From Macrostomum lignano (Eukaryota), in contig NIVC01000275.1 of NCBI GenBank assembly GCA_002269645.1, positions 124,001 through 188,000 of the forward strand: DNA of 64,000 nt, in the 5' to 3' direction. Shown piece after piece: positions 4,651-44,996 of this stretch (its first letter is position 1; every line of letters begins with the position of its first letter). Made by a program: the position numbers and the translations under genes. A model generated the notes under the pieces. It did not search any database and was not told where the DNA came from. It saw nothing but the letters and a program-made list of their open reading frames with translations.

Positions 4651-5879
4651 AAGGGGCGCCGTAGCCCAGCGGTAGCGCAGCTGCTCTGGTGTGCCAGCGA
4701 CCCAGACTCGATTCCAAGTGCAGTCACATTAATTTGGGGCTGAATTGGAATCCCAGCTTGGCTCTGCTTGTGTAATTAATGGCCATGAGAGCCAACCCCC
4801 CAAGGCGCAGTGAAGTGTACATGCCTAACGATAATATAAAGTTAGGGCCGCTGTACACTCCTGTGTGAGTGTGTGCCTGCGTACGTATCCGCGCGCTTGT
4901 ATGCCTGCTCAGGGGAGTCGGCGGAATGGGCAGTAATGCCTCTCGCCGGTTGTGTGCCCATGTCGCCTAAAGTGTGCCAGGGTGCACACAACCCCCCTGC
5001 CTCTAATAAAAAAGGAATCTGGGAGGGTAGCATGGGATCTGGGAGGGTATCATGGGAACTGGGAGGGTATCATGGGAACTGGGAATGTACTATATACTGT
5101 TCCATAAAAAAGACCACAGAAAGATCTGAGTATTATAGAATTTGTACAAACTAAGTCAACTTATTTAAAATGAAAGTTCTACCTGGCTGACTTGTATTGG
5201 CCTGGTTGGCCTTGCCATGGTCAGTAGCTGTGGAGTGAAAATAGCTCTCAATATTGCCAAGAATGCGCCTTACAATCATAGACATGCCTAACTCTTCTAG
5301 AGTTGCACTGGTAGCCAGGCTGATAAGATTTTATATTCTTGTATACTAAGCACAATTATTATCTGAAAGAAAGAGAAAAATAATTGCAGTATAAAATTCT
5401 TATCATTAATAGGATAGTAAACTATAATAATGAGTTATTTCAGGTGTAAAAAATTACAAATAAAGCCAGAGTCAAAGTGGTATAGTGTGCTAGAATACAT
5501 ACATTAAAAAGTTTTTATATCATTTATAATTTATTCAACATTTTAGGAAATAATTTTATCAAAGATAAGACTATACATGGATAACTGGTGTTTTTTTTAC
5601 TTTTTTACTTTTTTTAAGCTAAAAGAAATTTATTTTATAGCTTCATTGCTTTTAAATTGCCAAAAAATTTTTTCAAAAAACTTACCCTTTTTTTAGATTT
5701 TACCATTAAATATTCATAGGCCTTAGCCCTTTGCCAAAAGTCAAGACTAGCTTCTCTATTTTTTATTTATTAATATTAGTATACGAGCTGCCTCAATCTC
5801 AGCCTCAGCTCCAAGGTGAAGTGGTTCAGCCCTAGCCTCAGTGCCAAGTTGAAGAGTGGCCTTAGTCTCAACCATATAT

Positions 5880-6035
5880 GCGCAACCTTGGGATTCACCC
5901 AGCCATTTCTATTGGCAACATACACATGTTAGTCGCTATTGGCTGAGAGCAGTCACGTGACTACTATTCCATCCAATAGCGACTTACATGTGTGTGTTGC
6001 CAATAGAAATGGCTGGGTGAATCCCTAGGTTGCGC
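5880..6035. mobile_element. Palindromic MITE-like / foldback element
   Basis: 63-bp inverted arms 5880-5942 and 5973-6035 with 3 mismatches; the spacer contains AGTCACGTGACT. A 9-bp direct repeat GTCTCAACC lies nearby at 5865-5873 and 6045-6053. Confidence 0.75.
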
Positions 6036-6699
6036 CGAAGCATGGTCTCAACCTCAGCTCCAAAGTAAAATGGTACAGTCCCAGCCTTAGCTTCTCCTAT
6101 GTGAACTGCTCCTGTCTCAGCCTCAGCTCCTAAACAAATTACATTTTGTAGAGCTTCAGGCTTAGCCTGATCAGCAGTTTATAGCTAATGCTGTTAGCTA
6201 TAACTGTTGCTGTTAGCTATGGAGTTTTATGCTGTTTGCCCCTTTGAAGTTCTATCACAATTGCAAAAGAGTCACCTTTGGAACCACCAGTGCAGCCTCC
6301 AGTTTAATAGCAACATGAAGATAGCTTTTATTTAGATATTACAATGAGCAAGCTAAAAAGGCAAGGACATTCTACTTCAGGTTATTGAAGGATCCAAATA
6401 CTGCCTTGGTCACAATTATACTCGAGCTGGAATAACCTATTGGAGATGTGTAAAATGCACTGTTGGATAAAAATGTACTTGTTTGAGAATGGCAACACAC
6501 AAATGATGGTTTCTGGAGTGGAACGCCACATGACTGCAACCCTGGTATTGAAATTCCTACCAAACATAAGTTGCAACAAGCCACCACAATAGAAGCATTA
6601 AGCAAAAAGAAACTGCTTTTGACCTATCATGGCAATTGATAAAGAGGTATATTTGTAATATAATGGGGGCCTAGAGGGTGTCCCTACAAGCCATCACTC

Positions 6700-7700
6700 A
6701 AACAGCTTACCAAGAATGCAAACTATGGTTGTGCCAAAGAGCAGCCTTGTGATCCAGTGAACTTGCATTTTGAACTGGACTGTAGACACATTCCTTCAGA
6801 TTTTATTGTTGAAGACATTCACCTAGAACAGGCTAGTAGATATGTTTATAATGAGTGATCAACTGACTCTGCTAAAGCAATGTACCCAATGGTTCATGGA
6901 CAATACTTTTCATGTAGTCAAAGAGCATTTTACACAACTCTACTCAATTCATTGCTACATGTGCAAAGAGAACAGCATCAAGTAGGTGCCTCTAGTGTTT
7001 GCTTTAATGTCCAATAAGTGACTAATGTGTATAATTCTACAATAACTTCTTTTGTATATATACAAGATTTGCACACTATATTATGTAGTATATACTATAT
7101 ATAATTTTAATTGCAAATTTTGATTGCTATAGGAAAGTCTTAGCATGATTATATTGCCATCCTAAGATGTCTTTGTCAACATCTAAGTGCAACTGCATCT
7201 ATAGTATCCTTCCTTGACTTTGAGTGCTTTATGTGGCAAGCAATGTGTTAAGTTTTTCCTATGGCACAGTGAAAGGGATACCTTTTTCACTATAACCAAG
7301 CCATCTAGTGCTAAATTCAATTAGAAGGTCTTATTGAAGCTTATAGATATTATAAGCAAACAACAGAATAGATTTCTATTAACAATTGATGGCATTAGGC
7401 CCTTTCTTGCCTGCAGAGCACATGGAAGTTGGATTCAGAGAAACAATAAAAATGATCTCTAATGTAAGGCTACCTAGGCTTGGCTAGTATGTTAAAGCAA
7501 TATGGTTGTCAAATCTTATGTGGAGCACAGCTTAATGTTAGTATTATTTGGCAGGAAGTTTGAACTAATGATGAAGTGGAAAGATGGCACAGAAGGCTAA
7601 AGAGCAAAGCTGGACATGGGTAGCTTCCTCTCTATATGCTGCTTTGACTGCTGAATAAAGAAGCACAAGTGGCCATATACAAATTGTTGGAAATATAAAG
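6700..7700 (+). pseudogene. Decayed Mutator/MULE-type DDE transposase remnant
   Basis: Manual translation gives PCDPVNLHFELDCRHIPSDF, WFMDNTFHVVKEHFTQLYSIH (6890 onward), K*VPLVFALMS, DYIAILR, DFECFMWQAM, KGYLFHYNQAI**-like GCxFHxxQA motif, and *TNDEVERWHRRL (RTNNxxEGWH motif). Many stops and indels; possible intron-like gap at about 7018-7132. Confidence 0.85.
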
Positions 7701-8379
7701 AATCATTGTAAAAATATATATTTTAAATTTTTTTTCAACCTAAATGAATACTAAAGTGTATAAATTTATTGTAATGGAAAACACCTTTAATGAGACAAAA
7801 CTATTCAAAAATAAAACTGTAAAATCTATATTATAGAGCTCCTGGGCCTGACCCTGATGTAACTACCCTAGGAACACGATGAAGGTTGGCAGAAGTAGAC
7901 ATCCAGTCATCTAGTCATTGCTTGCAAGTGATAATCAAGGATAATAAATTAAAACTTATTAAGATAAAGGTTTATAACAACTAATTATAATTTAAAAATC
8001 AGTCAAACTAATAAATATAACACTAAATTGAATGGTTTTGTATCATTAAATGTTTCTTATCACAATAAATATATCATTTAATATGATTTGGACATGGTAT
8101 TCCTTTAAGCTAAAAAAAACATGTGCTATTTTAAAATTGTCAAATTGTCAAATTAGGCCTATTTTATTGGTTCATGACTTTGAGTTTCATTTTCAAAATA
8201 CCAAACTTTTACAACAATATAACAATAAATTTATTTGAACTGCAAATATAGTTGCTAATTTGGGCCTAATTCAAATATAACTTTGCCTAAATCAATATAG
8301 TTTTTACTTTTTTCAATTTTTAAAATTGTCATTACCATATGATGATTTAGAATATTACCAATTAATTTTAGGCTATAGC

Positions 8380-8566
8380 CAGGGGCAGCGGAGCCTAATA
8401 TTTTAGGGGAGGCACTGGGCATAAGGCAAGGGGGCACAGCCGTACAGGTACCTTTATAAGCTGTTAATTAGGGCCTAAAATCAGAAAAGGCACTAACATT
8501 ACCATGTGGACTCATTTTCTGGGGGGGGGCACATGCCCCCAGTGCCACAAGCTCCTGCCACCCATG
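8380..8566. mobile_element. hAT-like non-autonomous element (MITE)
   Basis: Imperfect TIRs (CAGGGGCAGCGGAGC ... GCTCCTGCCACCCATG); exact 8-bp direct repeat GCTATAGC at 8372-8379 and 8567-8574; internal GGGGGCACATGCCCCC near-palindrome. Confidence 0.65.
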
Positions 8567-11077
8567 GCTATAGCCATTTATATGGCATACATATATTGGC
8601 ATAGACAAAAAATGTAACTCGTAAGTCATTTAACATTAAACAGGAAAAAAATTATGGACTAAATGGCAAAATACTAATTCATTAGAATCTCTAGGGGCCT
8701 AACTCTAGGCCTTTTCATATTGCTTGTTCTGGTTCCAGGACCAGAACCAATTTTTGAAGTATAACTTTTTGTCTCCATAACTAGAGGGAGATATGTGCTA
8801 TAAAGTTTTTATTATTGAATGACAATCGCCAAGAAGAAAGTGAAAAAATTGTGCTAAGTGAGGTTGTTAAGGCAGTCAAACATTCAACAGAATTAAATAG
8901 TTATACTGCTGTTTTTCTTGGAAGATCCGAACCGATTCTGATTCTGGAATTGGTAATATGAAAAGCCTCTCTAAGTCTAATAAAGTTCAATGGCCACTAA
9001 TTTAAATTTCTCGGCTACTAAGACACATTCAATGAGTAACAAACCAACAGAGACAAAAGGCACAGATTAAATGACCGAGCATCACAGAGAGTTGTGTTGT
9101 GTATTGTGTAACAATGTTTAGGCCCTGCTGCCACCCCCCTTATATATCTGACCTGATAACTCTCGAGAAGTAAAAAAAATTAAGGTTTCTTTGAATTTCT
9201 ATGAACCTTATAAATTAGATTTTTATGTTGTAGGCCTAAGCTTAAACTTTTGGAACCCACATTGAAACCCCTATACTGAATGCTCTAATAGCTGACACGG
9301 ACAGTTTTACTGACACAATAATAGCAAAGGCATTTGTTTTAAACGTTGTGTCTCATTACATCGCAAGTTTTAATTTGCAACAAAGAAGAAATTATTGCCG
9401 AAAAAAAGTATGTTCACTATGAAAATTACGGACATTTTTTTATTTTTAATTTAGTTCATTTACTTAGCTTTCACCACATTCACCTCATTGGTCTCTTGTA
9501 TGTCTACCTACTTCTACTTATACTTATAGACTAGGCAGATTATATTGTCGGCTAGGGGCAGGCAGGCGGCAGCCTCGGCAGCTGCAGCCGGCAGGCACAG
9601 GCAGGGCCTAGACTATATTTGCCTGTTTGCATTGTACATAAGTAACATAAGATATTTTCAGAACTAATTGTAGTCTAACTTTTAATTCTAGTAAATATTT
9701 ATTGTCTGAACTCCCTGTACAGTTCAAAACATCCATGACCATGCTTCAATCTATTTCTGTATCTGACTATATTCTGAATCTTTGATTTGAGATTAGTAAA
9801 CTAGTCAAGTCTAAGTAGGCGTAAATTTTATGTCTATAATACTATATTTAAGGGAACCAATCAGTTTGGTGATATGAGCTATGAGGGGGCAGTTAAAACA
9901 AGGTGGTAATTTCAAATTTGTCATGGTATCCATTGAGTTTGCATGTTTACTTGAAATCTTGGATTTCAAAATAAGCCAAAAGTGGTAGCCCCACTATTAT
10001 ACATACATATATGCTTTTTCTAGTGTTTTAACTCTACCGTCCTAGTTATAACTTGTTAACTTGTTAAATTTTAACTAACTTTTATATTTGCATAGGCCTA
10101 GGCCCTAGTCTATTAATTGTTTGATTGTTGACTAAAGTAAATTGTAAATGCAATAAAAAATAATTGTAAATTAAATATACATGTATACCTCTAATAATGC
10201 GGCACACAAACTATGTCAACTTATGGTTGATTGCCTTTGACACAGTTGTCCCTATACTATCTGGACTAAAAATGTATTTACCCTAATCTAAGACTCCAAG
10301 GGGTTAAAATGCACCTTTTTGAAAATGTGTTATTGGTATAATTAAAACAAAATTACCTTTATTTGAATGGCAGGGACTAATGCCAATATGTTAAATTTCA
10401 AGGAATGTCCTTTAATCTTTAGCAATCACCAAATCAGTTGTTGCCAAACTGACTTGTTGCTAAATTGGTTGTTGCCAAATCAACTGGAAGTCTGGAAGCT
10501 ATATTTAAACTACTAAAGTAGGGCCTATTATTAGCTAGATGCTAGCAGCCTATAGCACTAGGCCTAGGCCTACTCAAATTTTTAAGATGTTAAGTTAATC
10601 TTAATATACTAAATCTCTAAGGTTTGTATGCTTGATTGCTTGTCCATAATGCTCTATACTAGAGATTGCAATTTTTGACCATTATTATACTAAATTCCAA
10701 TTTTTGGGACATACTAAGTGAGTATGTGAACATTTTTTCAAATTGCCTTGATAGCATCATGGCATGGCATTATGGCAATTATGCAATTCAATTTTCAAAA
10801 AGTTTTAAGTCAAAGAGTTTTTTAAACTATATTATAGATTCATAGAACTTCTTTATTTTATAACTTTAGAATTAAAAATTAGGGGCCTACTAGTATCCAA
10901 TGTTGCAAATGTTTTTGGTGCTTGTATCAAATGTTAACAGTATCAAATGTTTTTGGTGCTTGTAAAGTTAAGCAATTTCAGCTTATAGAACTAATAGAAG
11001 CTTTGTCATATAACCTTTTTCAATCGTTTCAATCAGTATGTGTAAAATAAAATCATATTAGTAAACTTGCTTGTTTC

Positions 11078-11806
11078 ATGTCGCTAGCCAGTGTTTTCAA
11101 TCTGCTGCCTGCATTTCGCGTGAAAGCAGCAAATATCAGCATTTTACACGAGCCTTCGCAGTTCTACAATGCTTTGATTGTAAGTTTTGCTTGATTTTTT
11201 TACTACCAGGAATGCTTTGGAGTCACACCAAGCCTCTCCATTCCCCTCGTCACTCAGTGCGGCATCGCTGGCGCCAGGCGCCGAATCGTCTTGGCGTCCC
11301 TCTACCTCGGCTGCGGCGCTCACGAGCGTCGCCTCGTCCAGTCGATGGTGTCGGCGCTGGACGCCGCTGGGTCACCGACCCGTCAGCGGCCACTTCGCGT
11401 CCGAGTTCTGCTGGACGCGGCGCGCGGCACCCGCGGCAGCCCGTTGAACAGCTCCACGGCGATGCTCCGTCCGCTGTGCGCTGCGGCTGAGCGTCGTTGC
11501 CATGGTAACGTCTGGAGCAACCGCGCAGATGTTCGCGTCAGCTTCTACCGCTGCCCCAGTCTGCTGGCCGCACTGCTGCCGGAGCGAATCAATGAAGTTG
11601 TGGGCCTGCAGCACATGAAGATCTACTTGTTTGATGACTCGGTGATTCTGTCTGGGTCAGTTTGCTAATTAGTTGGCTTTTTTGGTTGGTTAACTATTGG
11701 TTAGTTAGTCAGTTAGTTAGTTAGTTAGTTGTTCAGTTAGTTTTTCAGTTAGTTAGTTAGTAAGTTTTTCAGTTAGTTAGTTAGTTAGTTAGTCAGTTAG
11801 TTAGTC

Positions 11807-11941: not shown

Positions 11942-12014
11942 CAGTTAGTTAGTTAGTTAGTTGTTCAGTTAGTTAGTTAGTTAGTTAATTAGTAAGTTAG
12001 TTAGTTAGTTAGTC

Positions 12015-12057
<43 letters not shown>

Positions 12058-15000
12058 CAGTTAGTTAGTTAGTTAGTCAGTTAGTTAGTTAGTTAGTCAG
12101 TTAGTTAGTCAGTTAGTTAGTCAGTTAGTCAGTTAGTTAGTCAGTTAGTCAGTTAGTCAGTTAGTTAGTTAGTCAGTTAGTTAGTTAGTTAGTCAGTTAG
12201 TTAGTTAGTTAGTCAGTTAGTTAGTCAGTTAGTTAGTCAGTTAGTTAGTCAGTTAGTTAGTTAGTTAGTTAGTCAGTTAGTCAGTTAGTTAGTTAGTCAG
12301 TTAGTTAGTCAGTTAGTCAGTTAGTCAGTTAGTTAGTTAGTCAGTTAGTTAGTTAGTTAGTCAGTTAGTTAGTTAGTTAGTCAGTTAGTTAGTTAGTTAG
12401 TCAGTTAGTTAGTCAGTTAGTTAGTCAGTTAGTTAGTCAGTTAGTTAGTCAGTTAGTCAGTTAGTTAGTTAGTTAGTTAGTTAGTCAGTTAGTCAGTTAG
12501 TTAGTTAGTTAGTCAGTCAGTTAGTTAGTTAGTTAGTCAGTTAGTCAGTTAGTCAGTTAGTTAGTCAGTTAGTTAGTTAGTCAGTTAGTCAGTTAGTTAG
12601 TCAGTTAGTTAGTTAGTCAGTTAGTTAGTTAGTCAGTTAGTTAGTTAGTTAGTCAGTTAGTTAGTCAGTTAGTTAGTCAGTTAGTTAGTCAGTTAGTTAG
12701 TCAGTTAGTCAGTTAGTTAGTTAGTTAGTCAGTTAGTCAGTTAGTTAGTTAGTTAGTCAGTCAGTTAGTTAGTCAGTTAGTTAGTTAGTCAGTTAGAGTC
12801 AGTTAGTCAGTTAGTCAGTTAGTCAGTTAGTTAGTTAGTTGCATCCCCTTCTCCTGCAGACTGCGACAGGCTGGATTTTGCATATCCTCCAATGTGATGT
12901 TTGGGTGAATCTCGGAGCTCGCACTGGAAGCAGGCTTTGTTTTTTGTTTGGGTTAGCAACCAACTCCACCAGCTGGAAAGATATCTAAATCCCCAGCGCA
13001 CGCCCTCACCACAGAGCCAACCTGAGCAGGGACTACTTCACGGACAGGCAGGATCGCTACCTGTTGATCCGCGACGCGCCTCGCCTTTGCGACTTCCTGG
13101 AAAAGCTGGTCGACTGCGTGTCCGACGCGTCGGAACAGCTGAGCTCGGACGGCTGCCTGTCCCAGCCAGCCCGGCCGCCCGGCCAGTGGCTGGGAGATCG
13201 GGTTAACCGGCTTATCGCCGAATTCGCCACTAGCCAAGACTGCAGTGGAGAGTCGGACTCCACCGTCTATGCCATGGTGCAGATGGGGCCCATGGGAGTG
13301 TGCGATGACGCCTACGCCACCCAGCGGCTGCTGCACCAGCTGCCTCAGCTGCTTCAGACTGGCCAGCATCAGCTGCACCTGGCGTCTGGCTATTTCAATC
13401 TGACTGACGACTTCACTGAGGCTCTGCTGACTGCGCCACAGCAGCTGAGGGTTCTGTGTGCATCGCCTGCTGTGAGTGCCGGGTCATTGCGGTTTGTGTG
13501 TCTGTCTGCCGCTGTTGAGTCTGACTGAGTGTCCGTCTTCTGTGCTCTGTCTCAGTACCTGTCTCTGTGTCTCTGTCCGAGTGCCTGTATTTTGTGTGCT
13601 GTGTCTCAGTACCTGTCCGAGTGCCTGTCTTTTGTGTGCTGTGTCTCAGTACCTGTCCGAGTGCCTGTCTTGTGTGCTGTGTCTCTGTACCTGTCTGAGT
13701 GCCTGTCTTTTGTGTGCTGTGTCTCAATACCTGTCCGAGTGCCTGTCTTTTGTGTGCTGTGTCTCTGTACCTGTCCGAGTGCCTGTATTTTGTGTGCTGT
13801 GTCTCAGTACCTGTCTGAGTGTCTGTATTTTGTGTGCGGTGTCTCAATACCTGTCCGAGTGCCTGTCTTTTGTGTGCTGTGTCTCAGTACCTGTCCGAGT
13901 GCCTGTCTTTTGTGTGCTGTGTCTCAGTACCTGTCCGAGTGCCTGTCTTGTGTGCTGTGTCTCTGTACCTGTCTGAGTGCCTGTCTTTTGTGTGCTGTGT
14001 CTCAATACCTGTCCGAGTGCCTGTCTTTTGTGTGCTGTGTCTCTGTACCTGTCCGAGTGCCTGTATTTTGTGTGCTGTGTCTCAGTACCTGTCTGAGTGT
14101 CTGTATTTTGTGTGCTGTGTCTCAATACCTGTCCGAGTGCCTGTCTTGTGTGCTGTGTCTCTGTACCTGTCCGAGTGTCTGTCTTTTGTGTGCTGTGTCT
14201 CTGTACCTGTCCGAGTGCCTGTCTTGTGTGCTGTGTCTCAGTACCTGTCCGAGTGCCTGTCTTGTGTGCTGTGTCTCTGTACCTGTCTGAGTGCCTGTCT
14301 TTTGTGTGCTGTGTCTCAGTACCTGTCCGAGTGCCTGTCTTTTGTGTGCTGTGTCTCAATACCTGTCCGAGTGCCTGTCTTTTGTGTGCTGTGTCTCTGT
14401 ACCTGTCCGAGTGCCTGTATTTTGTGTGCTATGTCTCAGTACCTGTCTGAGTGTCTGTATTTTGTGTGCTGTGTCTCAGTACCTGTCCGAGTGTCTGTCT
14501 TGTGTGCTGTGTCTCTGTACCTGTCCGAGTGTCTGTCTTTCGTGTGCTGTGTCTCTGTACCTGTCCGAGTGCCTGTCTTGTGTGCTGTGTCTCTGTACCT
14601 GTCCGAGTGCCTGTCTTTTGTGTGCTGTGTCTCAGTACCTGTCCGAGTGTCTGTCTTGTGTGCTGTGTCTCTGTACCTGTCCGAGTGTCTGTCTTTTGTG
14701 TGCTGTGTCTCTGTACCTGTCCGAGTGCCTGTCTTGTGTGCTGTGTCTCTGTACCTGTCCGAGTGCCTGTCTTTTGTGTGCTGTGTCTCTGTACCTGTCC
14801 GAGTGTCTGTATTTTGTGTGCTATGTCTCAGTACCTGTCTGAGTGTCTGTATTTTGTGTGCTGTGTCTCAGTACCTGTCCGAGTGTCTGTCTTGTGTGCT
14901 GTGTCTCTGTACCTGTCCGAGTGTCTGTCTTTTGTGTGCTGTGTCTCTGTACCTGTCCGAGTGCCTGTCTTGTGTGCTGTGTCTCTGTACCTGTCCGAGT

Positions 15001-18431: not shown

Positions 18432-19609
18432 ATGTTCAGCAGCGGTAACAACATGGAGAAGCACCTGTTTAACTTGAAATTCGCCGCCAAAGACTTGGAG
18501 CGAAACGCTAAGAAATGCGAGAAAGACGAAAAGGTTGAGAAGAACAAGCTGAAAACGGCTATTCAGAAGGGCAACATGGAAGGCGCGAAGATTCACGCCG
18601 AGAATTCCATACGGCAGAAAAATCAGGCGCTCAATTATCGCCGCATGGCCTCGAGAATTGACGCCGTGGCCGCTCGGTGCAGACTGCCGTCACCACCAAA
18701 CAGGTGGGCCTTGGTGGATGAGAGGGCTGGCTTGAGTAGGTTAAGTAGGTGGAGGTCGGGTTGTACAACTGTTGACAGGCATTTGTAGATTGAGTAGATG
18801 AGTATACAGGTATTAGTATATTTTGTAGACAGACATTGGTAGATTAGGTAGACAGCTATCGGTAAATTGGGTAGACAGGCATTTTTAGGTTGGGTAGACA
18901 AGCATTGGTAGGTTGGGTAGACGGCATAAGTAGGTTGGGTAGACAGACATTGGTAGATTAGGTAGACAGGTATTGGTAGGTTGGGTAGACAGGCATCGGT
19001 AGGTTGGGTAGACAGGCATCGGTAGGTTGGGTAGACAGGCATTTTCAGGTTGGGTAGACAGGCAAAAGTAGGTTGGTTAGACAGACATTGGTAGGCTGGG
19101 TAGACAGACATTGGTAGGCTCGGTAGACAGACATTGGTAGGCTAGGTAGACAGACATTGGTAGGTTGGGTAGAGCAGAGTGTATCCATCTACTCTACTAC
19201 CCTGAAGTACGCAATAACACTACTGAAAGAAGAATCTAAACTGGACATCCATAACCGGCCCAACAGGTCACCAAGAGCATGGCCGGCGTGGTGAAGGGCA
19301 TGGAGGCGGCCATGAAGAGCATGAACCTGGAGCAGATCTCCCAGCTGATGGACAGATTCGAACGCGAATTCGAAAATCTCGACGTCCAATCGCAGGTGAT
19401 GGAGGGCACCATGTGCAACACATCCACTCTGACTGCGCCCGAGGGCGAGGTGAACATGCTGATGCAGGAGGCCGCCGACGAGGCCGGCATCGAGATCAAG
19501 ATGCAGCTGCCCGATGGCGGTAAATCCACCGTTGGCACCGCCACCGCCAGCGGCGAACAGGTTGGTCATCCTGGCTTGTCTAGCTAGTTAGTTAGTCAGT
19601 TAGTTAGTC

Positions 19610-19644
<35 letters not shown>

Positions 19645-19753
19645 CAGTTAGTCAGTTAGTTAGTCAGTTAGTTATTTAGCTAGCTAGTTAGTTAGTTAGT
19701 TAGTTGGTTAGTTAGTTAGTTAGTTAGTCAGTTAGTTAGTCAGTTAGTTAGTC

Positions 19754-19824
<71 letters not shown>

Positions 19825-20390
19825 CAGTTAGTTAGTCAGTTAGTTAGTTAGTTAGTTAGTTAGTCAGTTAGTCAGTTAGTTAGTCAGTTAGTTATTTAGC
19901 TAGCTAGTTAGTTAGTTAGTTAGTTGGTTAGTTAGTTAGTCAGTTATTCAGTTAGTTAGTCAGTTAGTTAGTTAGTTAGTTAGCTAGCTAGTTAGTTAGT
20001 CAGTTAGTTAGCTAGCTAGTCAGTTAGTTAGTCAGTTAGTTAGTCAGTTAGTCAGTCAGTCAGTTAGTCAGTCAGTTAGTTAGTTAGTTAGTTAGTCAGT
20101 TAGTTAGTTAGTCAGTTAGTTAGTCAGTCAGTTAGTTAGTTAGTTAGTTAGCTAGTTAGTTAGTTAGTTAGTTAGTCAGTTAGTTAGTTAGTTAGTTAGT
20201 TAGTCAGTTAGTTAGTTAGTTAGTTAGTCAGTTAGTCAGTCAGGCCAGGCAATCAGTCAGTCAGTCAGTCAGTCAGTCAGTCAGTTAACCCTAAGGAAAG
20301 GCCCCCATCGGCAGTGATCTGATGCAACACTGAATTCCCTAATTCCAGGACGAGCTGTCGCAGCGCTTGGCCGCACTGCGTCAGAACTGA
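18432..20390 (+). CDS. CHMP1: Charged multivesicular body protein 1 (ESCRT-III, CHMP1B-like). Exons 18432-18703, 19267-19560, 20349-20390; one base missing near 18677
   Basis: MEKHLFNLKFAAKDLERNAKKCEKDEKVEK...GNMEGAKIHAENSIRQKNQALNY.RMASRIDAVAAR, then (after +1 nt) VQTAVTTKQ|VTKSMAGVVK...MNLEQIS.LMD.FE..FENLDVQ...EAADEAG...|DELSQRLAALRQN* (MIM1 motif). GT-AG sites, all phase 0. Confidence 0.93.
18820..19172. repeat. About 23-bp minisatellite GGTAGGTTGGGTAGACAG(G/A)CAT(T), CHMP1 intron
   Basis: Tandem imperfect units. Confidence 0.85.
19585..20285. repeat. (GTTA/GTCA)n microsatellite, last CHMP1 intron
   Basis: Directly visible. Confidence 0.97.
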
Positions 20391-20934
20391 TTGGCCAATG
20401 GGGTTTGGCCATGCGAAGAACTCTGTGTACTTTCGCACCAACCCAATCGGTTTCATTAATTTGTCATTGAATTCGTAAAACAGATTTTACGGTTGACGCA
20501 GTTCTCCTAATTAAAATTTCGTTTTTTTTTAGTTACTAAAAGACTGTGTATGAATATGAATATGACCTGTATAACATAAGTTTGTATTGATTGTATATTG
20601 CTCATTTATCATATGCATGCATATTTATATATTCTGGATAGCGCTGGCTCTGCCCAGCTAAAAGAACCAGTTTTAAGTTATTACTCAGATTTAAGTAAAA
20701 CAAATATTTACCTTCTGAATATACTGCAATCTGCTTTCGGTTATCTGTTTTGTCTATTTTCAAAAAACTAATAAACGCTATCAATAGAAGATGAGTTAAG
20801 TTGCTTAATTTTTTAACGCGTCATTGCTGCGGTATGCTCGCACGCGGTTATTATAGAATTGCGTTTTTTGATACTTTTGACTACCATTTATTTAATCGCA
20901 ACATTGTGAAACTAAAAGGCATCTTTTGAAAAAA

Positions 20935-21555
20935 TCGCCCTATCCGCCCCGGAGGATCGCTTCAATCCACACCGGAGAATCCCCAATATACACCGGAGAA
21001 TCGCCCCAAACCACACCGGAGAATCGCCCCAATCCACACCGGAGAATCGCCCCAATCCACACAGGAGAATCGCCCCAATTCACACTGATAAATCGCCCCA
21101 ATCCACACTGATAAATCGCCCCAATCCACACTGGAGAGTCGCCCCAATCCACACTGATAAATCGCCCCAATCCACACTGATAAATCGCCCCAATCCACAC
21201 GGAGAATCGCCCCAATCCACACTGGAGAATCGCCCCAATCCACACTGGAGAATCGCCCCAATTCACACTGATAAATCGCCCCAATCCACACGGAGAATCG
21301 CCCCAATCCACACTGGAGAATCGCCCCAATTCACACTGATAAATCGCTCCAATCCACCGGAGAATCGCCCCAATCCACACTGATAAATCGCCCCAATCCA
21401 CTTTTGGGGCGATCCACTCCATTGCCGATAAATGTGCAATCCACTTTTGCACACCGGAGAATCGCCCAAATCCACACCGGAGAATCGCCCCAATCCACAC
21501 CGGAGAATCGCCCAAATCCACACCGGAGAATCGTTCAATCCACTCCGGAGAATCG
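20935..21555. repeat. About 23-bp minisatellite AATCGCCCCAATCCACAC(CGGAG/TGATA) between the CHMP1 and PDIA3 3' ends
   Basis: Tandem imperfect units. Confidence 0.9.
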
Positions 21556-22520: not shown

Positions 22521-25500
22521 TTACAGGTCCTGCTTTTTCCTGTTGCCAGCCCGGTCGTAGCCGCGCAGCTCATCGGTGGCCTCCTTGGCCAGGTAGGTGA
22601 TGAAGTCGTTCACCTCGCGGCCGCCCTGGTACTGCTTCGGCTGCGACTTGCCGCCCTTCGGCGCGAAGTAGATCGTCGGGAAGCCGCGCACATCGTAAGG
22701 CGGCGGCACGTCGTTGGCGGTGGCGTCCATCTTGGCGATGACCAGGTCGGTCTCGCCGGACAGTTTCTCGGCCAGCTCATCGTATTTCGGGGCCAGGGAT
22801 TTGCAGTGGCCGCACCAGGGCGCGTAGAACTCGATCAGCACGTCCTTGGTGGGGTCGTTGACCAGCTTGTCGAAGTTCTTGGCTACGGCAATCTTCACCG
22901 GGGCAGACTGGGACTCGGGCTCCGGCTCCGACTTCAGGTAGGGCGTGAGCCGTCCGGCCTGCATGTCGGTCAGGAAAGCGTCGAACGCGTCCATGCTGCG
23001 GGAATTGAAATTTGTCATTTTTTAGTTTTTTTTAAATGCTCCAATCAGACTACTGCCGCGGCAGGGTGAGTAGAAAGTATGGAGTTTTAATTCAATATTT
23101 ATGAATCAATACCCAAAGGCTGAGTCATGATAAACATAGCCAGGTAAACTGTATTAAAGAGAAAGGAGACAAAAGCCTCCCCAGGACTACCGTGGGGGCG
23201 GGCGGCGGACTACCAGCTGTTGCGAATTCGTTTGCGACGCGTGGCACAGGATTAAGAATGGGGTCAGCAATGTCTATTTCTTGAATTTTATTAGTCAGCA
23301 GAAATTCATGCCGGGAGAAGGGGGCAGTTAGAGGCAAACCGGCAGAAACTGCACGTTCCAATGAGCAAAAATTCACCTGTACGAAAATGCATTAAGAACG
23401 CATAACTTCCTTTATACGAAATGGTTCCGCCGACACACAAATTTTCCCTTTGTGAAAATATACAGGCATGAAGCATTTAATAATTCTGGTTATGAAGGCA
23501 ACCCGGATCACCAGCTAGATAAGGAAAATTCTCAAAAAAATACAATGAATAAAACTAAGAGAAAAGTCTTACAACTTTGACGCGCGACCCTGGCTGTTTT
23601 TAAGAAATAAAATAATTGGCATGGCAATCACAGTTACCGGTAGAGTTGTTTGTTTTGTTGGTGAAATAACACAAAAAAGCAAGCGATCGGGCAAGGAGGC
23701 GAGGCAATAGGGCAAGGAGCCTGGGCGATGGGGCAAGGAGGCTGGGCGATGGAGCAAGGAGGCTGGGCGATAGGGAAGGAGCCTGGGCGATGGGGCAAGG
23801 AGGCTGGGCGATAGGGAAGGAGCCTGGGCGATGGGGCAAGGAGGCAGGGTGACTCAAAGGCACTCACGTGAAATCCTCGGCCATCTTAAACTTCTGGCCC
23901 TTGTCATTCTTGGCGGCCACGTAAACTTTCTGCTCGTCGGGCGAGTCGACGCCAAACTCAGACAGCTCGAAACTCATGGCCTTGCTGTTGGCAACTGAGA
24001 AGTGCAGGCCGGTGCCGGTGTACTTCTTAGCGACCTTCATGATGCGATTGCGCCAGTAGTTCGTGCCCTTGGGATTGCGCTCGTAGTCAACACCGTAGTA
24101 GGCCGTGACCAGGGGCTGCTTGAAGTACTTGCTGTTGCCCGAGGTGCGGTGGCCCACCATGCCGTAGCTGGATGAGGGAACGGGGTGGACGCTGTGGTCA
24201 GCCAAACTATTTTCCTGAAAGCTTAAAACTTTCCCACAAAGTTTAAAACTTCCCCGCAAAGCTCAAAACTTCCCCACAAAGCTCAAAACTTCCCCACAAA
24301 GCTCGAAACTTCCCCACAAAGCTCAAAACTTCCCCTCAAAACTGCCACACAGAGCTCCAAACTTCCTCGCAAAGCTCAAAACTTCCCAACAAAGCTCAAA
24401 ACTTCCCAACAAAGCTCAAAACTTCCCCACAAAGCTCAAAACTTCCCCACAAAGCTCAAAACTTCACCACAAAGCTCGAAACTTCCCCACAAAGCTCAAA
24501 ACTTCCCCTCAAAACTGCCACACAGAGCTCCAAACTTCCTCGCAAAGCTCAAAACTTCCCAACAAAGCTCAAAACTTCCCAACAAAGCTCAAAACTTCCC
24601 AACAAAGCTCAAAACTTCCCAACAAAGCTCAAAACTTCCCAACAAAGCTCAAAACTTCCCAACAAAGCTCAAAACTTCCCAACAAAGCTCAAAACTTCCC
24701 AACAAAGCTCAAAACTTCCCAACAAAGCTCAAAACTTCCCCACAAAGCTCAAAACTTCTCTGCAAAGCTAAAAAAATTTACGCTGGAACTCATAAGGTCC
24801 AGCTGTTTGCAACCAAAAGCTCACATGTTAGCCTCAATCCAGGCGCGCAGAGCTCCGGAGTCCATGGCGCCACTGTAGGCCAGTTTGTTGTCCTCAAACT
24901 TACTCTGCAGCACAGTTGGCCGCATAATCACAACCTGATCGTTGAAGCCGAATTTCGAGTTGATGTCAGCCGAGACGCTGTGGGCAAAGGCGAAATCCTC
25001 GCTCAGAGAGTCGGCAGCCTGCTTGAAGGCGGACAGGCCGCTGGCCGACTCGCTAGAGAAGAAGGCGACCACAAATGGCTCCTGTCCGGCCATCAGCTTG
25101 TCCAGGCCGCTGGCGTCTTTCAGCAGCCGGCTGGAGGGCCCGGCCTTGGACTTCATGTACTTCACGATGCCGTCCGCCTCGCGCGGCCCGTTGTAGTCAG
25201 AGGAGACCTCGCCGTTCTTGAAGATTTTCAGCGTGGGATAGCCGCTCACTCCGTATTTGCCGCACACGGCAGTCTCGGCTGTGCAGTCAACTTTCACCAG
25301 CGGTACAGGCGGATCGCTCGACTTCAACCGGGTGGCCGCCTCCTCGTACTGGGGCGCCAGGCGCTTGCAGTGGCCGCACCTGACCGGAGATTAGCAATGT
25401 AGATTTCAGTCACTTTCAGTCACTATCAATTTTGGCACCAAATAGCATGCAGAAAAAAATATTCAGAAGTTGGTTAATAATTGTAATCACTGTGAGCTCA

Positions 25501-27776
25501 GGATTACGTCCCATGTTAGCATCATGCATTTGTGTGTGAAAAATGTTTTAGTCAATATATTTTGCTTAATTTTAAACACATTACAAAAAGGTTAATGATG
25601 TCTCAAAAGGTTAAAACGATTCCTAGGAACTTACAGAGCTATACTTAATTTTAAAGGCTTAAAATGTATAAAATGTATAACACCCCCATGGCTAGCTAGT
25701 TTTTAAAAATTTCAAGCATATAAAGGAAGCATTATAATTTTGATCTTGGCTTAGATTTAACTTTTTGGTCCAAAACAAAATTTTGGGCTAATTCCCCCTC
25801 TCTTACAAGAATAACTATATACTGATAGCATATGAATATCTGCCACAAAATTTCTTACATTTTGGTGCCATGTTGCACCATTGCAAAATTTATTATATCT
25901 AGTGCCATGCCACACTATGAATTGGTAATAAAAATTCAGGTTTGAAGTTGTTTTTTTGGCCTTTATTTTTTATGTTTAGTACTATATACTAGCTAGGGTA
26001 GGTGTTTGCCAGTATCCAGATTTTTTTTTATTTCCCCCAGGTAGGGTTACGAAGTTTAAATAGAGTAATTATCTTGGCAGTGGGGCCCAGTGAGTTTTCT
26101 TATCAGTTGGCTTTGGCACAATCATTAAAATTGGTGTGAAGTTTCTTGCTGCACACAGGCTAATAAAAAAATACAGTGAAAAACCTATTTAAAATAGTTT
26201 TTCAAATATTTAATCTATTTAGAAATGAGCTACAGCTTAATAAAAATACATGTACCATCCCAGGCACATTTGACATCTTTTGGCAAAAAACTGTGAAAAT
26301 TGGTTGAGCCATTTGGGAGATAATTGATTGCATACAAATATACAAGATTTTCATTTCATAGAATACTAGACTAGAAGATTAGAAGCTTAATAGTAATATA
26401 AGCCTTTAAGTCTTTATAGAGCTTTAAAAAGTTGTTTAGAAATTAGCAAGTGCATTTTACATTTAGATATTTTAATTTTCTCTTTTTATAGCATCTTGAC
26501 ATTGTTATTTTAGTGTAACACAATTTAAAACTAAAAGTTTGCCTTTGCCAAAGTTTTTCTAGTGCCACAATTTAGCAATATATGTCTGTTGCATAATACT
26601 TATAGCAATACCTCTATAAGATTTAAAATTGAATTACAATAAGGACTTTTGGCCTTTGGCCTTTCCTAATTAAGAAAAATCTTAGATTCTACTATTGATG
26701 CTTTATACTCAAAAGGTAGATTTCACCAATTATTTTAGTATTGTAAAACAAGTGAAGTTTGAGATTGCAAGGAAAACCAACTTGGCGCTTAGGCCTAACA
26801 ATCCATATATTTTATAAGCCAAAGATTGAGGTGGGGTTTGGGTATTGCACACACATGGGTACAACCGCATGTTGCAAACAACTACCCCCCATACGCAAGC
26901 ATGTACAAATAGGACTACGAATAACATTAGAATATTTAGGTGCATAGAATGCTCACAGTATAAATTAGTTATTTTTCTAGTATATGCACTTGACATAAAA
27001 GAAAAATGAGGGCCTGCAACTTAGTGCAATTGGTATAAAAACTATGTAGTTAGATATATATATTAATTTGCAATAATATAAGAATTTTACTAATTTTATT
27101 ACAAATTCTTATCTTTATATTTTTAGAAATCTTTTTGTTATAGTTATATTACCTTTAAGACAATCATTAATTTTAATAGGCCCTATGAATTTAAAAGATT
27201 GCTTAGACTTTGAATTCAATTCTCTGTTTGCTATTTGCTATTCACTAGAAGCTAGGACCTATTATTATTAATATACAAATAAATCATTTTTTAATTATAA
27301 AGTTAATAAACTATTCTTTCAACTGTTTTTAGGATATGGCAACTCTAAGTGCAAGTGTATAATGCAAAGAGTACATTTTTGATGCATGGTGCATATGCAT
27401 GAGGAAAAAACAGGGGGCATTTCTTCTAGAAGTTCTAGCACACTGCACACATAGTACCCTTTTTTGACATCTATGGCTAATGTTATCAAACAATAGTTTC
27501 ATATTACAAAACATTAAAAGTAAAAAAATATTATCATAAAACAAAATAACAAAATAAGATACTACTACTTCTTATTTAATTCCAATGAGACTTTAGAGAT
27601 GTGCACCTGTGTTATGCTTTCTAGAAAACTTACCATGGAGCATAAAATTCCACAAGAGCAATTTCAAGGTCCTTAATTCGGGAATCAAAATTAGCATCTG
27701 TGAACTCCAGAACATCTGAAGCCAAAGTGGTAGAAGCTAGGGCTACAAAAATCAAAATTGAAAAAGATCGAACCAT
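22521..27776 (-). CDS. PDIA3: Protein disulfide-isomerase A3 (ERp57). Exons 27776-27634, 25379-24825, 24167-23868, 22995-22521 (490 aa)
   Basis: Signal peptide [19 protein letters not shown] then [13 protein letters not shown]...VEFYAPW|CGHCKRLAP; second WCGHCK site; [25 protein letters not shown] (ERp57 b' signature); LKSEP; basic C-tail ending KQDL. All introns are phase 2 GT-AG; total 1473 nt, no frameshift. Confidence 0.96.
23685..23845. repeat. 21-bp minisatellite GGG(C/A)AAGGAG(C/G)CTGGGCGAT(A/G), PDIA3 intron 3
   Basis: About 7 tandem units. Confidence 0.85.
24215..24770. repeat. 20-bp minisatellite AAAGCTCAAAACTTCCC(A/C)AC, PDIA3 intron 2
   Basis: About 27 tandem units. Confidence 0.95.
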
Positions 27777-27925
27777 TTTACTTTCGTAATTTTCTCAACT
27801 TTAGAACAATTTTGTTCGCAACTCCTGATAACTTAATTAAGGTTAAATAATTTAGAAAAAATGTGTCAAAATATAGACTGCGATTTGTAACACGCGTAAG
27901 AACCGTATTCAAATATAGCGGCAAA

Positions 27926-27944
27926 AATGGCATCGTCTGATTGG
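27926..27944 (-). promoter_or_regulatory. CCAAT box with ERSE-like spacing (CCAAT-N9-CCATT) about 150 bp upstream of the PDIA3 ATG
   Basis: Minus strand reads CCAAT CAGACGATG CCATT; canonical ERSE is CCAAT-N9-CCACG. An ETS-type CCGGAAGT lies at about 28118-28125. Confidence 0.3.
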
Positions 27945-44627: not shown

Positions 44628-44686
44628 TCTCACTTGCACTCTCACTCTCACCCTCACTCTCACTCTCACTTGCACTCTCACTCTCA

Positions 44687-44723
<37 letters not shown>

Positions 44724-44758
44724 CCTCACTCTCACTCTCACTTGCACTCTCACTCTCA

Positions 44759-44810
<52 letters not shown>

Positions 44811-44964
44811 TCTCACTCTTACTGTCACTCTCACCCTCACTCCCACTCTCACTCTCCCTCTTCTCACTCTTACTGTCACTTTCACTCTCACTCCCACTCT
44901 CACTCTCACTCTTACTCTTCTCAATCTTACTGTCACTCTCACTCTCACTCTCATTCTCACTCTT

Positions 44965-44996
<32 letters not shown>

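What the first reader, a model, noticed from the sequence alone, without database searches (positions are those of the whole stretch)
5100..11040. Block with near-total CpG loss and apparent CpA-to-TpA decay (RIP-like signature) over dead transposons
Seen: this 6-kb AT-rich block has only scattered CG dinucleotides and is visibly rich in TAG/CTA words, whereas equally AT-rich DNA at 20.4-22.4 kb and 27.8-29.3 kb keeps many CGs. In the MULE remnant, lesions at conserved residues read as C:G to T:A changes. CpG context: R to TGA (7561), R to TGC (7309). CpA/TpG context: KQVPL Q to TAG (6983), GC.FH C to TAC (7279), QAIW W to TAG (7306). Established: CpA-to-TpA hypermutation is the hallmark of fungal RIP, whereas animals mainly show CpG decay. 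Inference: a locally targeted methylation/deamination process that also hits CpA may act on these regions. Caveat: stop codons are ascertainment-biased toward CAA/CAG/TGG/CGA, and ancestral codons are inferred from family motifs.
Basis: partly seen in the sequence, partly recalled or inferred. Interest (0 to 1): 0.72.

Follow-up and report, generated by a model that had tools for sequence, protein, structure and literature searches.

The report
CpG-decayed dead transposon island, not RIP
A 6-kb AT-rich stretch holding a dead Mutator-like transposon in a flatworm (Macrostomum lignano) genome has lost about 80% of its CpGs in the ordinary way that methylated DNA does, and the suspected fungal-style (RIP-like) CpA-to-TpA mutation is not supported.

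Summary
The CpG loss is real, sharp-edged and far beyond chance. Window 5085-11077 has 33 CG against 174 expected (P about 6e-39), and the transposase remnant has none in 1.35 kb. The RIP-like reading fails. CpA/TpG is in excess (o/e 1.20), not depleted, and TpA is slightly below expectation (0.94). The CA+TG surplus (131) nearly equals the CG deficit (140). RIP indices are 1.02 (product), 1.38 (substrate) and -0.36 (composite), against thresholds of >1.15, <=0.75 and >0.

At family-conserved codons of the MULE remnant, G:C>A:T transitions hit 10/16 CpG sites, 6/33 CpA/TpG sites and 5/62 CpC/CpT sites. CpA against the rest gives P=0.18. Simulations calibrated on the remnant's 13 in-frame stops fit best with no CpA boost and reject a boost of 3-fold or more; about 2-fold cannot be excluded. 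The "TAG/CTA richness" comes from a recurring word, RGGCCTA.

The window is from Macrostomum lignano, which retains DNMT1 and DNMT3. A second island with the same signature is exactly intron 1 of PDIA3 (25382-27628). All other unique DNA in the window keeps its CpGs. Best explanation: locally methylated, probably transposon-derived DNA decaying by 5mC deamination. This is ordinary in kind. It has modest value as a sequence footprint of where this flatworm methylates.

The parts
5085..11077 (.). AT-rich (GC 0.34), CpG-depleted island. It lies between a CpG-rich flank next to the RASSF-like gene (minus strand, left) and the start codon of a PGS1-like gene (plus strand, right).
   Evidence: 33 CG against 173.8 expected, P 6e-39. 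Edges resolved to within about 100 nt.
6682..7677 (+). MULE (Mutator-like) transposase pseudogene: five frame segments, 13 in-frame stops (6 TAG, 4 TAA, 3 TGA), at least 4 frame changes, zero CpG.
   Evidence: The profile of 95 homologues matches HMM positions 17-307 collinearly, E 1e-9 to 1e-23. Pfam PF10551 gives E 4.8e-6 at 27.4 bits against a cut-off of 27.6. Stops are listed. Best homologue is 39% identical.
6340..6560 (+). Probable N-terminal FLYWCH-type zinc-finger region of the same transposase (KGKD-LL...YWRC motif), also broken by stops.
   Evidence: Weak blastx matches to the N-terminal parts of family members, best E 0.009. No Pfam hit.
7019..7131 (.). 113-nt AT-rich stretch that interrupts the transposase reading frame between profile positions 129 and 128-130. 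It is an insertion or an unalignable decayed stretch.
   Evidence: Gap between collinear profile segments.
5880..6035 (.). Near-perfect palindrome: arms of about 63 nt and a loop of about 30 nt with CACGTG at its centre and CCAAT/ATTGG boxes in the arms. It keeps all its CpGs and holds 6 of the island's 33.
   Evidence: the repeat finder I1. Arm comparison shows 3-4 mismatches, none at a CpG.
5780..6160 (.). Three diverged copies of a 33-45-nt direct repeat (TCTCAGCCTCAGCTCC...) flanking the palindrome.
   Evidence: the repeat finder D1 and D3.
8154..10890 (.). Cluster of the word RGGCCTA / TAGGCCY in both orientations: 19 of the island's 22 copies. The whole 64-kb window has 36.
   Evidence: 22 observed against 2.5 (Markov-1) or 6.1 (Markov-2) expected, P<0.003.
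25382..27628 (-). Second island with the same signature (GC 0.30, 8 CG against 50.5 expected). It coincides exactly with intron 1 of the PDIA3-like gene.
   Evidence: Exon 1 is 27629-27776 and ends ...EFYAPW|gtaag. Exon 2 starts at 25380 with (W)[13 protein letters not shown].
11078..11179 (+). First coding exon of the PGS1-like gene ([34 protein letters not shown]). A 30-nt intron follows at 11180-11209, then a CpG-rich exon 2. This marks the right edge of the island.
   Evidence: Translations and sequence. The match to human PGS1 is from my own knowledge of that protein.
4651..4964 (.). CpG-retaining GC-rich flank. It marks the left edge together with the 20-nt minisatellite at 5014-5084.
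   Evidence: 19 CG in 363 nt, o/e 0.68. Tandem repeat.

Best explanation
The island is old, probably transposon-derived DNA in the Macrostomum lignano genome: a dead FLYWCH-MULE element plus unidentified AT-rich sequence. It has been CpG-methylated in the germ line while its surroundings have not. Spontaneous deamination of 5-methylcytosine turned its CpGs into TpG/CpA, at a rate modelled as about 10-25 times that of other C>T changes. Ordinary AT-biased mutation over roughly 0.3-0.5 substitutions per site did the rest, producing the stops, the frameshifts and the low GC. No CpA-specific hypermutation is needed.

Shown: the CpG-specific loss, its local confinement, its direction at ancestral CpG codons, the dead transposase, and the organism. 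Inferred: that methylation is the cause, that it is aimed at the inserted DNA rather than at the transcription unit, and that it acts in the germ line.
For: CpG o/e is 0.19 while GpC is 1.52. The CG deficit is 140 and the CA+TG surplus is 131, while TA is 41 below expectation. In the transposase remnant CG o/e is 0.00, CA/TG 1.38 and TA 0.92. At family-conserved columns, transitions hit 10/16 inferred CpG sites against 11/95 other G:C sites, P 3e-5; several of these made stops or replaced invariant residues, so they occurred after the element died. In unique DNA, CpG o/e is bimodal: only 5085-10754 and 25691-27522 fall at 0.04-0.46, and all 40 other segments lie at 0.52-1.13, including other AT-rich ones. 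Simulations with CpG hypermutability alone reproduce the observed indices at the divergence implied by 13 stops in 294 codons. The window is M. lignano: its LINE ORFs are 100% and 99% identical to UniProt A0A1I8IXZ7. That species retains DNMT1 and DNMT3 and has low-level 5mC (PMC11292947, PMC9246332, PMC10658182).
Against: There are no methylation data for this locus. The literature calls M. lignano methylation low, and one review calls its pattern unknown. The borders are razor-sharp. PDIA3 exon 2 has 30 CG in the 300 nt that abut the depleted intron. That requires either a methylation boundary at the splice site or strong forces preserving exonic CpG. An intact, very young LINE in the same window (50.3-54.0 kb) is only mildly depleted (o/e about 0.7), so 'all transposons are methylated' is not shown. 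Apart from the MULE, the transposon origin of the islands is assumed, not shown.
Confidence: 0.75

Rival explanations
1. RIP-like process. A repeat- or locus-targeted cytosine methylation/deamination system also converts CpA to TpA at high rate, as in ascomycete RIP.
For: Several lesions at conserved residues are TpG>TpA or CpA>TpA: Q>TAG at 6983, C>Y at 7280 and W>Y at 7292, and W>TAG at 7306 (codon, ancestral W from P0001). The point estimate for CpA/TpG (18%) is about twice that for CpC+CpT (8%), and at one conservation threshold (0.6) P is 0.02. TpA/ApT (1.02) is higher than in the rest of the window (0.88).
Against: The substrate index (CpA+TpG)/(ApC+GpT) is 1.38 for the block and 1.55 in the remnant, against <=0.75 required. 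The product index is 1.02 against >1.15. The composite index is -0.36. None of ten 1-kb windows passes all three criteria (thresholds from PMC7882544, where true RIP regions show 1.6 / 0.2-0.3 / 1.3). CpA/TpG is in surplus by almost exactly the number of lost CpGs. A CpA boost of 3-fold or more predicts TpA>1 and CA/TG<1.1 at the remnant's divergence. CpG sites are hit 3.4 times more often than CpA sites (P 0.003). The stop spectrum (6 TAG, 4 TAA, 3 TGA) is not distinguishable from the no-boost model. The host is an animal, and no duplicate of the block exists in the window.
Confidence: 0.03
2. Mild CpA/TpG excess on top of CpG decay. The same local methylation marks CpA weakly (DNMT3-type non-CpG methylation), or there is a general sequence-context effect, giving about 2-fold more C>T at CpA than at CpC/CpT.
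For: The odds ratio is about 2-2.5 across thresholds. Simulations with a 2-fold boost fit about as well as no boost if divergence is 0.1-0.2.
Against: It is not significant at three of four thresholds. With the divergence implied by the stops (0.3 or more), a 2-fold boost predicts CA/TG about 1.15-1.2 and TA about 1.0, whereas the remnant shows 1.38 and 0.92. Some 'CpA' events are second hits on former CpGs, such as CGA>TGA>TAA at 7380-7381.
Confidence: 0.15
3. Born that way. The AT-rich, CpG-poor composition was inherited from the inserted elements, through a family consensus already depleted or through horizontal arrival from a methylating AT-rich genome. The locus is not specially methylated in M. 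lignano.
For: The two islands share a dinucleotide signature (GC 0.30-0.34, GpC 1.5-1.7, TpA 0.93-0.94) that differs from all other unique DNA in the window. The borders coincide with an exon edge and with gene ends, as insertions would. Only about 2.4 points of the GC deficit can come from CpG loss itself (140 of 5941 sites). Relatives of the MULE are in distant marine animals such as Branchiostoma and Asterias.
Against: The CpG>TpG/CpA changes at invariant Arg and other codons include stop-creating ones, so they happened after the transposase died, that is, in a resident dead copy. The remnant is more depleted (0 of about 32 expected CG) than the rest of the island. No close relative of the element was found in any database searched.
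Confidence: 0.12
4. Transcription-unit methylation. The islands are depleted because they are intronic or outron DNA of constitutively expressed genes (PDIA3 intron 1, and the 5' region of trans-spliced PGS1). This would be the usual invertebrate gene-body methylation, not transposon targeting.
For: Island 2 is exactly PDIA3 intron 1. Island 1 ends 1 nt before the PGS1 start codon, with a possible acceptor (ttag) 17 nt upstream. Both are housekeeping genes.
Against: The exons and other introns of PDIA3 (22.5-25.4 kb) keep their CpGs, with o/e 0.85-1.11, as do PGS1 exons at 1.1. Canonical gene-body methylation depletes exons too and usually spares the 5' end. No upstream PGS1 exon was identified.
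Confidence: 0.1

Closest known systems
Methylation-driven CpG decay (5mC deamination) of silenced transposons; mosaic methylated/unmethylated domains of invertebrate genomes
   Same: The loss is CpG-specific, with a matching TpG/CpA surplus and GpC untouched. It forms sharply bounded domains in an otherwise CpG-replete genome. The content is dead transposon. The host has DNMT1 and DNMT3 (PMC11292947).
   Different: In most spiralians studied, methylation sits on the gene bodies of expressed genes rather than on transposons (PMC11292947, PMC9246332). Here the exons next to the islands are not depleted. The methylation pattern of this species is reported as unknown (PMC9246332).
Fungal repeat-induced point mutation (RIP) and its AT-rich 'large RIP-affected regions'
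   Same: An AT-rich block several kb long over a dead transposon, next to GC-richer gene DNA, with many premature stops and G:C>A:T transitions.
   Different: The dinucleotide signature is the opposite: CpA/TpG in surplus and TpA not enriched. The indices are 1.02 / 1.38 / -0.36, against 1.6 / 0.2-0.3 / 1.3 in true RIP regions (PMC7882544). CpG, not CpA, is the preferred context. GC is 34%, not about 21-23%. The host is a flatworm.
FLYWCH-MULE (Mutator-like) DNA transposons of marine invertebrates
   Same: Collinear match to the MULE transposase core with the D..D..E-region motifs (MDGTF, KQVPL, DFE, GC.FH, QA.WR, RTNN..E.WH), and an N-terminal YWRC zinc-finger-like stretch. Homologues occur in Branchiostoma floridae and Asterias amurensis.
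   Different: It is a long-dead copy, 40-60% identical to relatives only locally. No terminal inverted repeats or target-site duplication are recognisable. No intact relative was found for this species.

Membership tests
RIP (repeat-induced point mutation) | Product index TpA/ApT high (>1.15 in RIPper; about 1.6 in true RIP regions) | tested here: not met
   1.02 for the block and 0.93-1.17 in 1-kb windows. Threshold from PMC7882544.
RIP (repeat-induced point mutation) | Substrate index (CpA+TpG)/(ApC+GpT) low (<=0.75; about 0.2-0.3 in true RIP regions) | tested here: not met
   1.38 for the block, 1.55 in the MULE remnant, and 1.11-1.58 in windows.
RIP (repeat-induced point mutation) | Composite index above 0 (mostly above 1) | tested here: not met
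   -0.36 for the block. Two of ten windows reach +0.04 and +0.06, but they fail the substrate criterion.
RIP (repeat-induced point mutation) | C>T transitions dominated by the CpA context in alignments to an unmutated reference | tested here: not met
   At family-conserved codons: CpG 10/16, CpA/TpG 6/33, CpC/GpG 1/29, CpT/ApG 4/33. CpG against CpA gives P 0.003. CpA against the rest gives P 0.18. The sample is small, and ancestral codons are inferred from protein homologues, not from a DNA consensus.
RIP (repeat-induced point mutation) | Acts on duplicated sequence (copies of several hundred bp) | tested here: inconclusive
   There is no second copy of any part of the block in the 64-kb window. 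The rest of the genome could not be searched.
RIP (repeat-induced point mutation) | Host is a fungus with a RID-type methyltransferase | tested here: not met
   The window is Macrostomum lignano, a flatworm. Presence of a RID-like gene was not tested.
5mC-deamination CpG decay | Strong CpG deficit while GpC is not depleted | tested here: met
   CpG o/e 0.19, GpC o/e 1.52. 33 CG against 174 expected, P 6e-39.
5mC-deamination CpG decay | Reciprocal surplus of the decay products TpG/CpA | tested here: met
   CA+TG surplus of 131 against a CG deficit of 140. The remnant has CA/TG o/e 1.38.
5mC-deamination CpG decay | Directional CpG>TpG/CpA changes at inferred ancestral CpGs | tested here: met
   10 of 16 sites. 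Examples are R>C (6730, 7309), R>Q (6743), R>stop (7561, 7380) and V>I after a C (7159, 7303).
5mC-deamination CpG decay | Host encodes maintenance and de novo CpG methyltransferases | not tested
   Taken from the literature only: DNMT1 and DNMT3 are conserved in M. lignano (PMC11292947, PMC9246332).
5mC-deamination CpG decay | The locus is methylated in germ-line cells | not testable with these tools
   This needs bisulfite, EM-seq or nanopore data.
MULE (Mutator-like) DNA transposon | MULE transposase domain | tested here: met
   The family profile matches five collinear segments, E 1e-9 to 1e-23. Pfam PF10551 gives E 4.8e-6 at 27.4 bits, just under the 27.6 cut-off, as expected for a decayed copy with stops written as X.
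MULE (Mutator-like) DNA transposon | N-terminal zinc finger (FLYWCH/WRKY type) | tested here: inconclusive
   A YWRC motif and weak blastx matches to the N-termini of relatives, E 0.009. No Pfam FLYWCH hit.
MULE (Mutator-like) DNA transposon | Long terminal inverted repeats and an 8-10-bp target-site duplication | tested here: not met
   The only inverted repeats found are the 5880-6035 palindrome and a 26-nt pair at 10079/10561. At about 0.4 substitutions per site, terminal repeats would no longer be recognisable.

The most novel reading that the evidence does not exclude
The sparse 5mC of Macrostomum lignano is aimed at inserted, transposon-derived AT-rich DNA, with borders as sharp as a splice site, rather than at gene bodies as in other spiralians. 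The same local methylation also touches CpA weakly, giving an excess of CpA>TpA of about 2-fold. The CpG-depleted islands would then be a sequence-only map of the germ-line methylome of a free-living flatworm.
Probability: 0.15. Interest if true: 0.5.

Novelty: new member of a known kind. Interest (0 to 1): 0.22.

Why it matters
As a candidate animal RIP it would have been remarkable, but that reading fails. What remains is a clean textbook footprint of CpG methylation over a dead transposon. Its modest value is organism-specific. [quoted passage not shown] In this window CpG depletion is bimodal. It marks two AT-rich, probably inserted islands, while neighbouring exons, promoters and other AT-rich DNA are untouched. 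This predicts that methylation in this species is local and insert-directed rather than gene-body-wide. Existing or new methylomes can test that prediction directly.

Tried and rejected
1. A family DNA consensus for the MULE was not obtainable. No paralogue exists in the window. Only one homologue was found by the word-indexed search, at 39% identity. The exhaustive search gave 13,355 relatives, but the closest are 40-60% identical locally. The source genome is not in the look-up collections. I therefore inferred ancestral codons from a protein profile, which gives little power.

P0001 was used instead.

3. Six-frame Pfam scans of the whole block found nothing, not even the MULE, so they say little about other transposon remnants.

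4. Rfam and tRNA scans of the window were empty, so there is no SINE or tRNA-like element to report.

5. The first two simulation scripts timed out. The partial output (equilibrium, CpG factor 8) agrees with the later runs.

6. Using L001, the contig of the best homologue, as a DNA reference failed: it comes from a different organism and has no DNA similarity.

7. The palindrome arms and the 45-nt repeats offer too few differences for a substitution spectrum.

8. An assembly chimera or food-organism contamination was rejected for island 2, because PDIA3 exons 1 and 2 splice coherently across it.

9. Wasik et al. 2015 (PMC4603488), the primary source on M. lignano methylation, is not held in the library.

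Full report
**1. The observation**

For 5100-11040, GC is 0.342 and there are 33 CG, giving a strand-symmetric CpG o/e of 0.19. GpC o/e is 1.52. Read at fine scale, the island runs from 5085, just after a 20-nt minisatellite, to 11077, one base before the start codon of a PGS1-like gene. It holds 33 CG against 173.8 expected (Poisson P 6e-39).

The edges are abrupt:
- left edge: 16 CG in 4665-4964 against 1 in 5085-5384
- right edge: 1 CG in 10778-11077 against 26 in 11078-11377

No CG occurs between 6525 and 7876. A sub-stretch at 8.8-9.8 kb is less depleted, with o/e 0.46.

The two comparators do keep their CpGs: o/e 1.04 at 20400-22400 and 0.90 at 27800-29300. About a third of the CGs in the first comparator come from a 23-nt minisatellite with one CG per unit. 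Its unique flanks are nevertheless also CpG-normal, at 0.98 and 0.93.

**2. The claimed TAG/CTA richness**

This does not hold as a mutational signature. Given the block's dinucleotide content, TAG is 112 against 114 expected and CTA is 151 against 116. Together they are 263 against 231 (P 0.013). Twenty-two of these trinucleotides lie inside a recurring word, RGGCCTA or its complement TAGGCCY. That word occurs 22 times, against 2.5 expected under Markov-1 and 6.1 under Markov-2, mostly between 8.15 and 10.9 kb. Setting those aside removes the excess.

**3. What is in the block**

A profile built from 95 homologues matches five collinear, frame-shifted segments over 6682-7677, at profile positions 17-307, with E from 1e-9 to 1e-23. 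The homologues were found with the best hit, P0001, as query. A stitched translation hits Pfam MULE at E 4.8e-6. Upstream, at 6340-6560, a KGKD..LL...YWRC stretch aligns weakly with the N-terminal zinc-finger regions of family members.

The remnant carries 13 in-frame stops (6 TAG, 4 TAA, 3 TGA), at least four frame changes and a 113-nt interruption. Relatives occur in Branchiostoma floridae, Asterias amurensis and unnamed marine eukaryotic contigs. Nothing close was found for this genome.

No other protein-coding remnant, RNA family or tRNA-like element was detected. 'Dead transposons' in the plural is therefore an assumption.

The left part of the island holds a near-perfect 63-nt-arm palindrome at 5880-6035. 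It has CACGTG at its centre and CCAAT boxes in its arms, is flanked by three diverged 33-45-nt repeats, and keeps all of its CpGs.

**4. Organism and setting**

The LINE ORFs at 50.3-53.2 kb are 100% identical over 318 aa, and 99% over 151 aa, to a UniProt protein of Macrostomum lignano. About 38% of the window is tandem repeat.

The island lies between a RASSF-like gene on the minus strand to the left and a PGS1-like gene on the plus strand. PGS1 exon 1 is 11078-11179, followed by a 30-nt intron.

According to the literature read here, M. lignano retains DNMT1 and DNMT3 and has low-level 5mC, unlike planarians and parasitic flatworms. [quoted passage not shown]

**5. A second island**

With tandem repeats masked, CpG o/e of unique DNA in the window is bimodal. 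Only 5085-10754 and 25691-27522 fall at 0.04-0.46. All 40 other segments lie at 0.52-1.13, including other AT-rich ones with GC 0.33-0.40.

The second island (GC 0.30, 8 CG against 50.5 expected, P 1e-13) is exactly intron 1 of the PDIA3-like gene. Exon 1 (27629-27776, minus strand) ends ...EFYAPW|gtaag. Exon 2 starts at 25380 with (W)[13 protein letters not shown] and has 30 CG in its first 300 nt. The coherent splice rules out a chimeric assembly.

The two islands share their whole dinucleotide profile: GpC 1.5-1.7, CA/TG 1.19-1.20 and TpA 0.93-0.94.

**6. Testing the RIP-like reading by composition**

RIP removes CpA/TpG and creates TpA. Here CpA/TpG is in surplus (o/e 1.20, and 1.38 in the remnant) and TpA is just below expectation (0.94 and 0.92).

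The balance is telling. The block lacks 140 CG, has 131 extra CA+TG, and has 41 fewer TA than expected. The decay products of CpG are still there and have not been converted onward.

| RIP index | This block | RIPper threshold | True RIP regions |
|---|---|---|---|
| product (TpA/ApT) | 1.02 | >1.15 | about 1.6 |
| substrate ((CpA+TpG)/(ApC+GpT)) | 1.38 | <=0.75 | 0.2-0.3 |
| composite | -0.36 | >0 | about 1.3 |

Block values are; thresholds and true-RIP values are from PMC7882544. None of ten 1-kb windows passes all three criteria.

**7. Testing it by context-resolved counts**

No DNA consensus was obtainable. I therefore inferred the ancestral residue at columns where at least half of the 95 homologues agree (123 columns). 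I took the nearest codon and counted G:C>A:T transitions at sites where the transition is non-synonymous.

| Context | Transitions / sites at risk | Fraction |
|---|---|---|
| CpG | 10/16 | 62% |
| CpA/TpG | 6/33 | 18% |
| CpC/GpG | 1/29 | 3% |
| CpT/ApG | 4/33 | 12% |

CpG exceeds everything else (P 3e-5) and exceeds CpA (P 0.003). CpA against CpC+CpT has an odds ratio of about 2.5 with P 0.18. Across conservation thresholds of 0.4, 0.5, 0.6 and 0.7, P is 0.25, 0.18, 0.02 and 0.60.

They are part of a spectrum dominated by CpG. Some 'CpA' events are second hits on former CpGs, such as CGA>TGA>TAA at 7380-7381.

**8. Simulations**

I mutated Markov sequences under a model with AT-biased substitution, a CpG factor of 10-25, and a CpA/TpG factor r. 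The sequences were trained either on the CpG-normal AT-rich DNA of the window or on the LINE ORFs.

Thirteen stops in 294 codons correspond to about 0.4-0.5 substitutions per site at r=1, or about 0.3 at r=3.

| Model, at that divergence | CA/TG | TpA | Substrate index |
|---|---|---|---|
| r=1 | 1.24-1.30 | 0.89-0.93 | 1.27-1.32 |
| r=3 | about 1.05 | about 1.08 | 1.03-1.2 |
| r=5 | below 0.9 | above 1.18 | not given |
| observed, block | 1.20 | 0.94 | 1.38 |
| observed, remnant | 1.38 | 0.92 | 1.55 |

r=2 is marginal. The model is simple and the starting composition is unknown. I therefore read this as: no CpA term is needed, a boost of 3-fold or more is excluded, and about 2-fold is not excluded.

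**9. Mechanism**

The most economical account is local germ-line CpG methylation of these two islands, followed by 5mC deamination. Ordinary AT-biased drift over a long time accounts for the rest. CpG loss itself explains only about 2.4 points of the GC deficit, so most of the AT-richness is either inherited from the inserted DNA or due to general drift.

The stop-creating and invariant-residue CpG changes show that the decay continued after the transposase died.

Why these islands and not their neighbours is inferred, not shown. Insert-directed methylation fits the exon-sharp border of island 2 and the CpG-normal exons of PDIA3 and PGS1. Classical gene-body methylation does not fit, because it would also deplete exons. 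A 'born CpG-poor' origin cannot be fully excluded. The young intact LINE in the window is only mildly depleted (o/e about 0.7), so a general rule for all transposons is not established.

**10. Comparison, novelty and verdict**

The feature works like, and is best filed under, methylation-driven CpG decay of silenced insertions in a mosaic-methylated animal genome. It fails every testable defining feature of RIP.

It is a new instance of a known kind. It has modest interest as a sequence footprint that predicts where M. lignano places its sparse methylation.

- Interest: 0.22
- Strong RIP-like process: about 0.03
- Mild CpA excess: about 0.15
- Best explanation: about 0.75

Noticed in passing
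window 8154-10890 (19 copies), also 5717, 6668, 7396: The word RGGCCTA / TAGGCCY occurs 22 times in the island, in both orientations and with no longer consensus. Only 2.5-6 copies are expected, and the whole 64-kb window has just 36. GGCC itself is 23 against 5 expected from base composition. The origin is unknown; subterminal binding-site repeats of a transposon or a short dispersed repeat are possibilities.
   Followed up: partly
window 5880-6035: A near-perfect palindrome with arms of about 63 nt, 3-4 mismatches, and a predicted hairpin of -125 kcal/mol as RNA. It has CACGTG at the centre and CCAAT/ATTGG boxes in the arms. It keeps every CpG although it sits in the depleted island. So it is younger than its surroundings, or unmethylated, or homogenised between its arms. 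It could be a foldback element or a bidirectional promoter-like element.
   Followed up: partly
window 25382-27628: A second AT-rich, CpG-depleted island (8 CG against 50.5 expected) coincides exactly with intron 1 of the PDIA3-like gene. The composition flips at the splice acceptor from GC 0.31 to GC 0.64, with 30 CG in the next 300 nt.
   Followed up: yes
window 27629-29300: PDIA3 exon 1 and its upstream region are AT-rich (GC 0.29-0.39) but CpG-normal, with a CCAAT box (ctgattggctgg at about 27940). This looks like an unmethylated promoter in AT-rich DNA.
   Followed up: partly
window 50322-54008 (minus strand): A LINE with endonuclease, reverse-transcriptase and RNase H ORFs of 282, 540 and 555 aa. 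The ORFs are 99-100% identical to a Macrostomum lignano UniProt entry, which identifies the organism. The element is GC-rich (0.57-0.66) with CpG o/e about 0.7. It is flanked by a 109-nt direct repeat (50099-50207 / 55999-56107, 96% identical) that overlaps a DEG/ENaC-like exon.
   Followed up: partly
window 43900-46579 and 47027-49678: A tandem segmental duplication of about 2.7 kb at 96% identity. It consists mostly of (CTCTCA)n and 13-nt minisatellites plus a unique 640-nt segment.
   Followed up: no
whole window; e.g. 1001-2000, 12001-13000, 19001-20000: About 38% of the window is micro- or minisatellite, in 36 arrays. Several arrays, including (TACCC)n-like, (GTTA)n and (TAGT)n, give formally 'RIP-positive' indices, with TpA/ApT of 3-15 and a substrate index of 0.4-0.65. 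Sliding-window RIP indices are therefore unreliable in this genome unless repeats are masked.
   Followed up: partly
window 11180-11209: The first intron of the PGS1-like gene is only 30 nt long (gtaag...accag), whereas PDIA3 intron 1 is 2.2 kb. The long intron is probably long because of inserted DNA.
   Followed up: no
L001 (ENA ERZ25073809 contig, 264 kb): The contig carrying the closest homologue of the transposase has FLYWCH, reverse-transcriptase and MULE ORFs side by side. It is AT-rich (GC 0.33-0.41) with only mild CpG depletion (0.5-1.07). It comes from a different, unidentified eukaryote.
   Followed up: no
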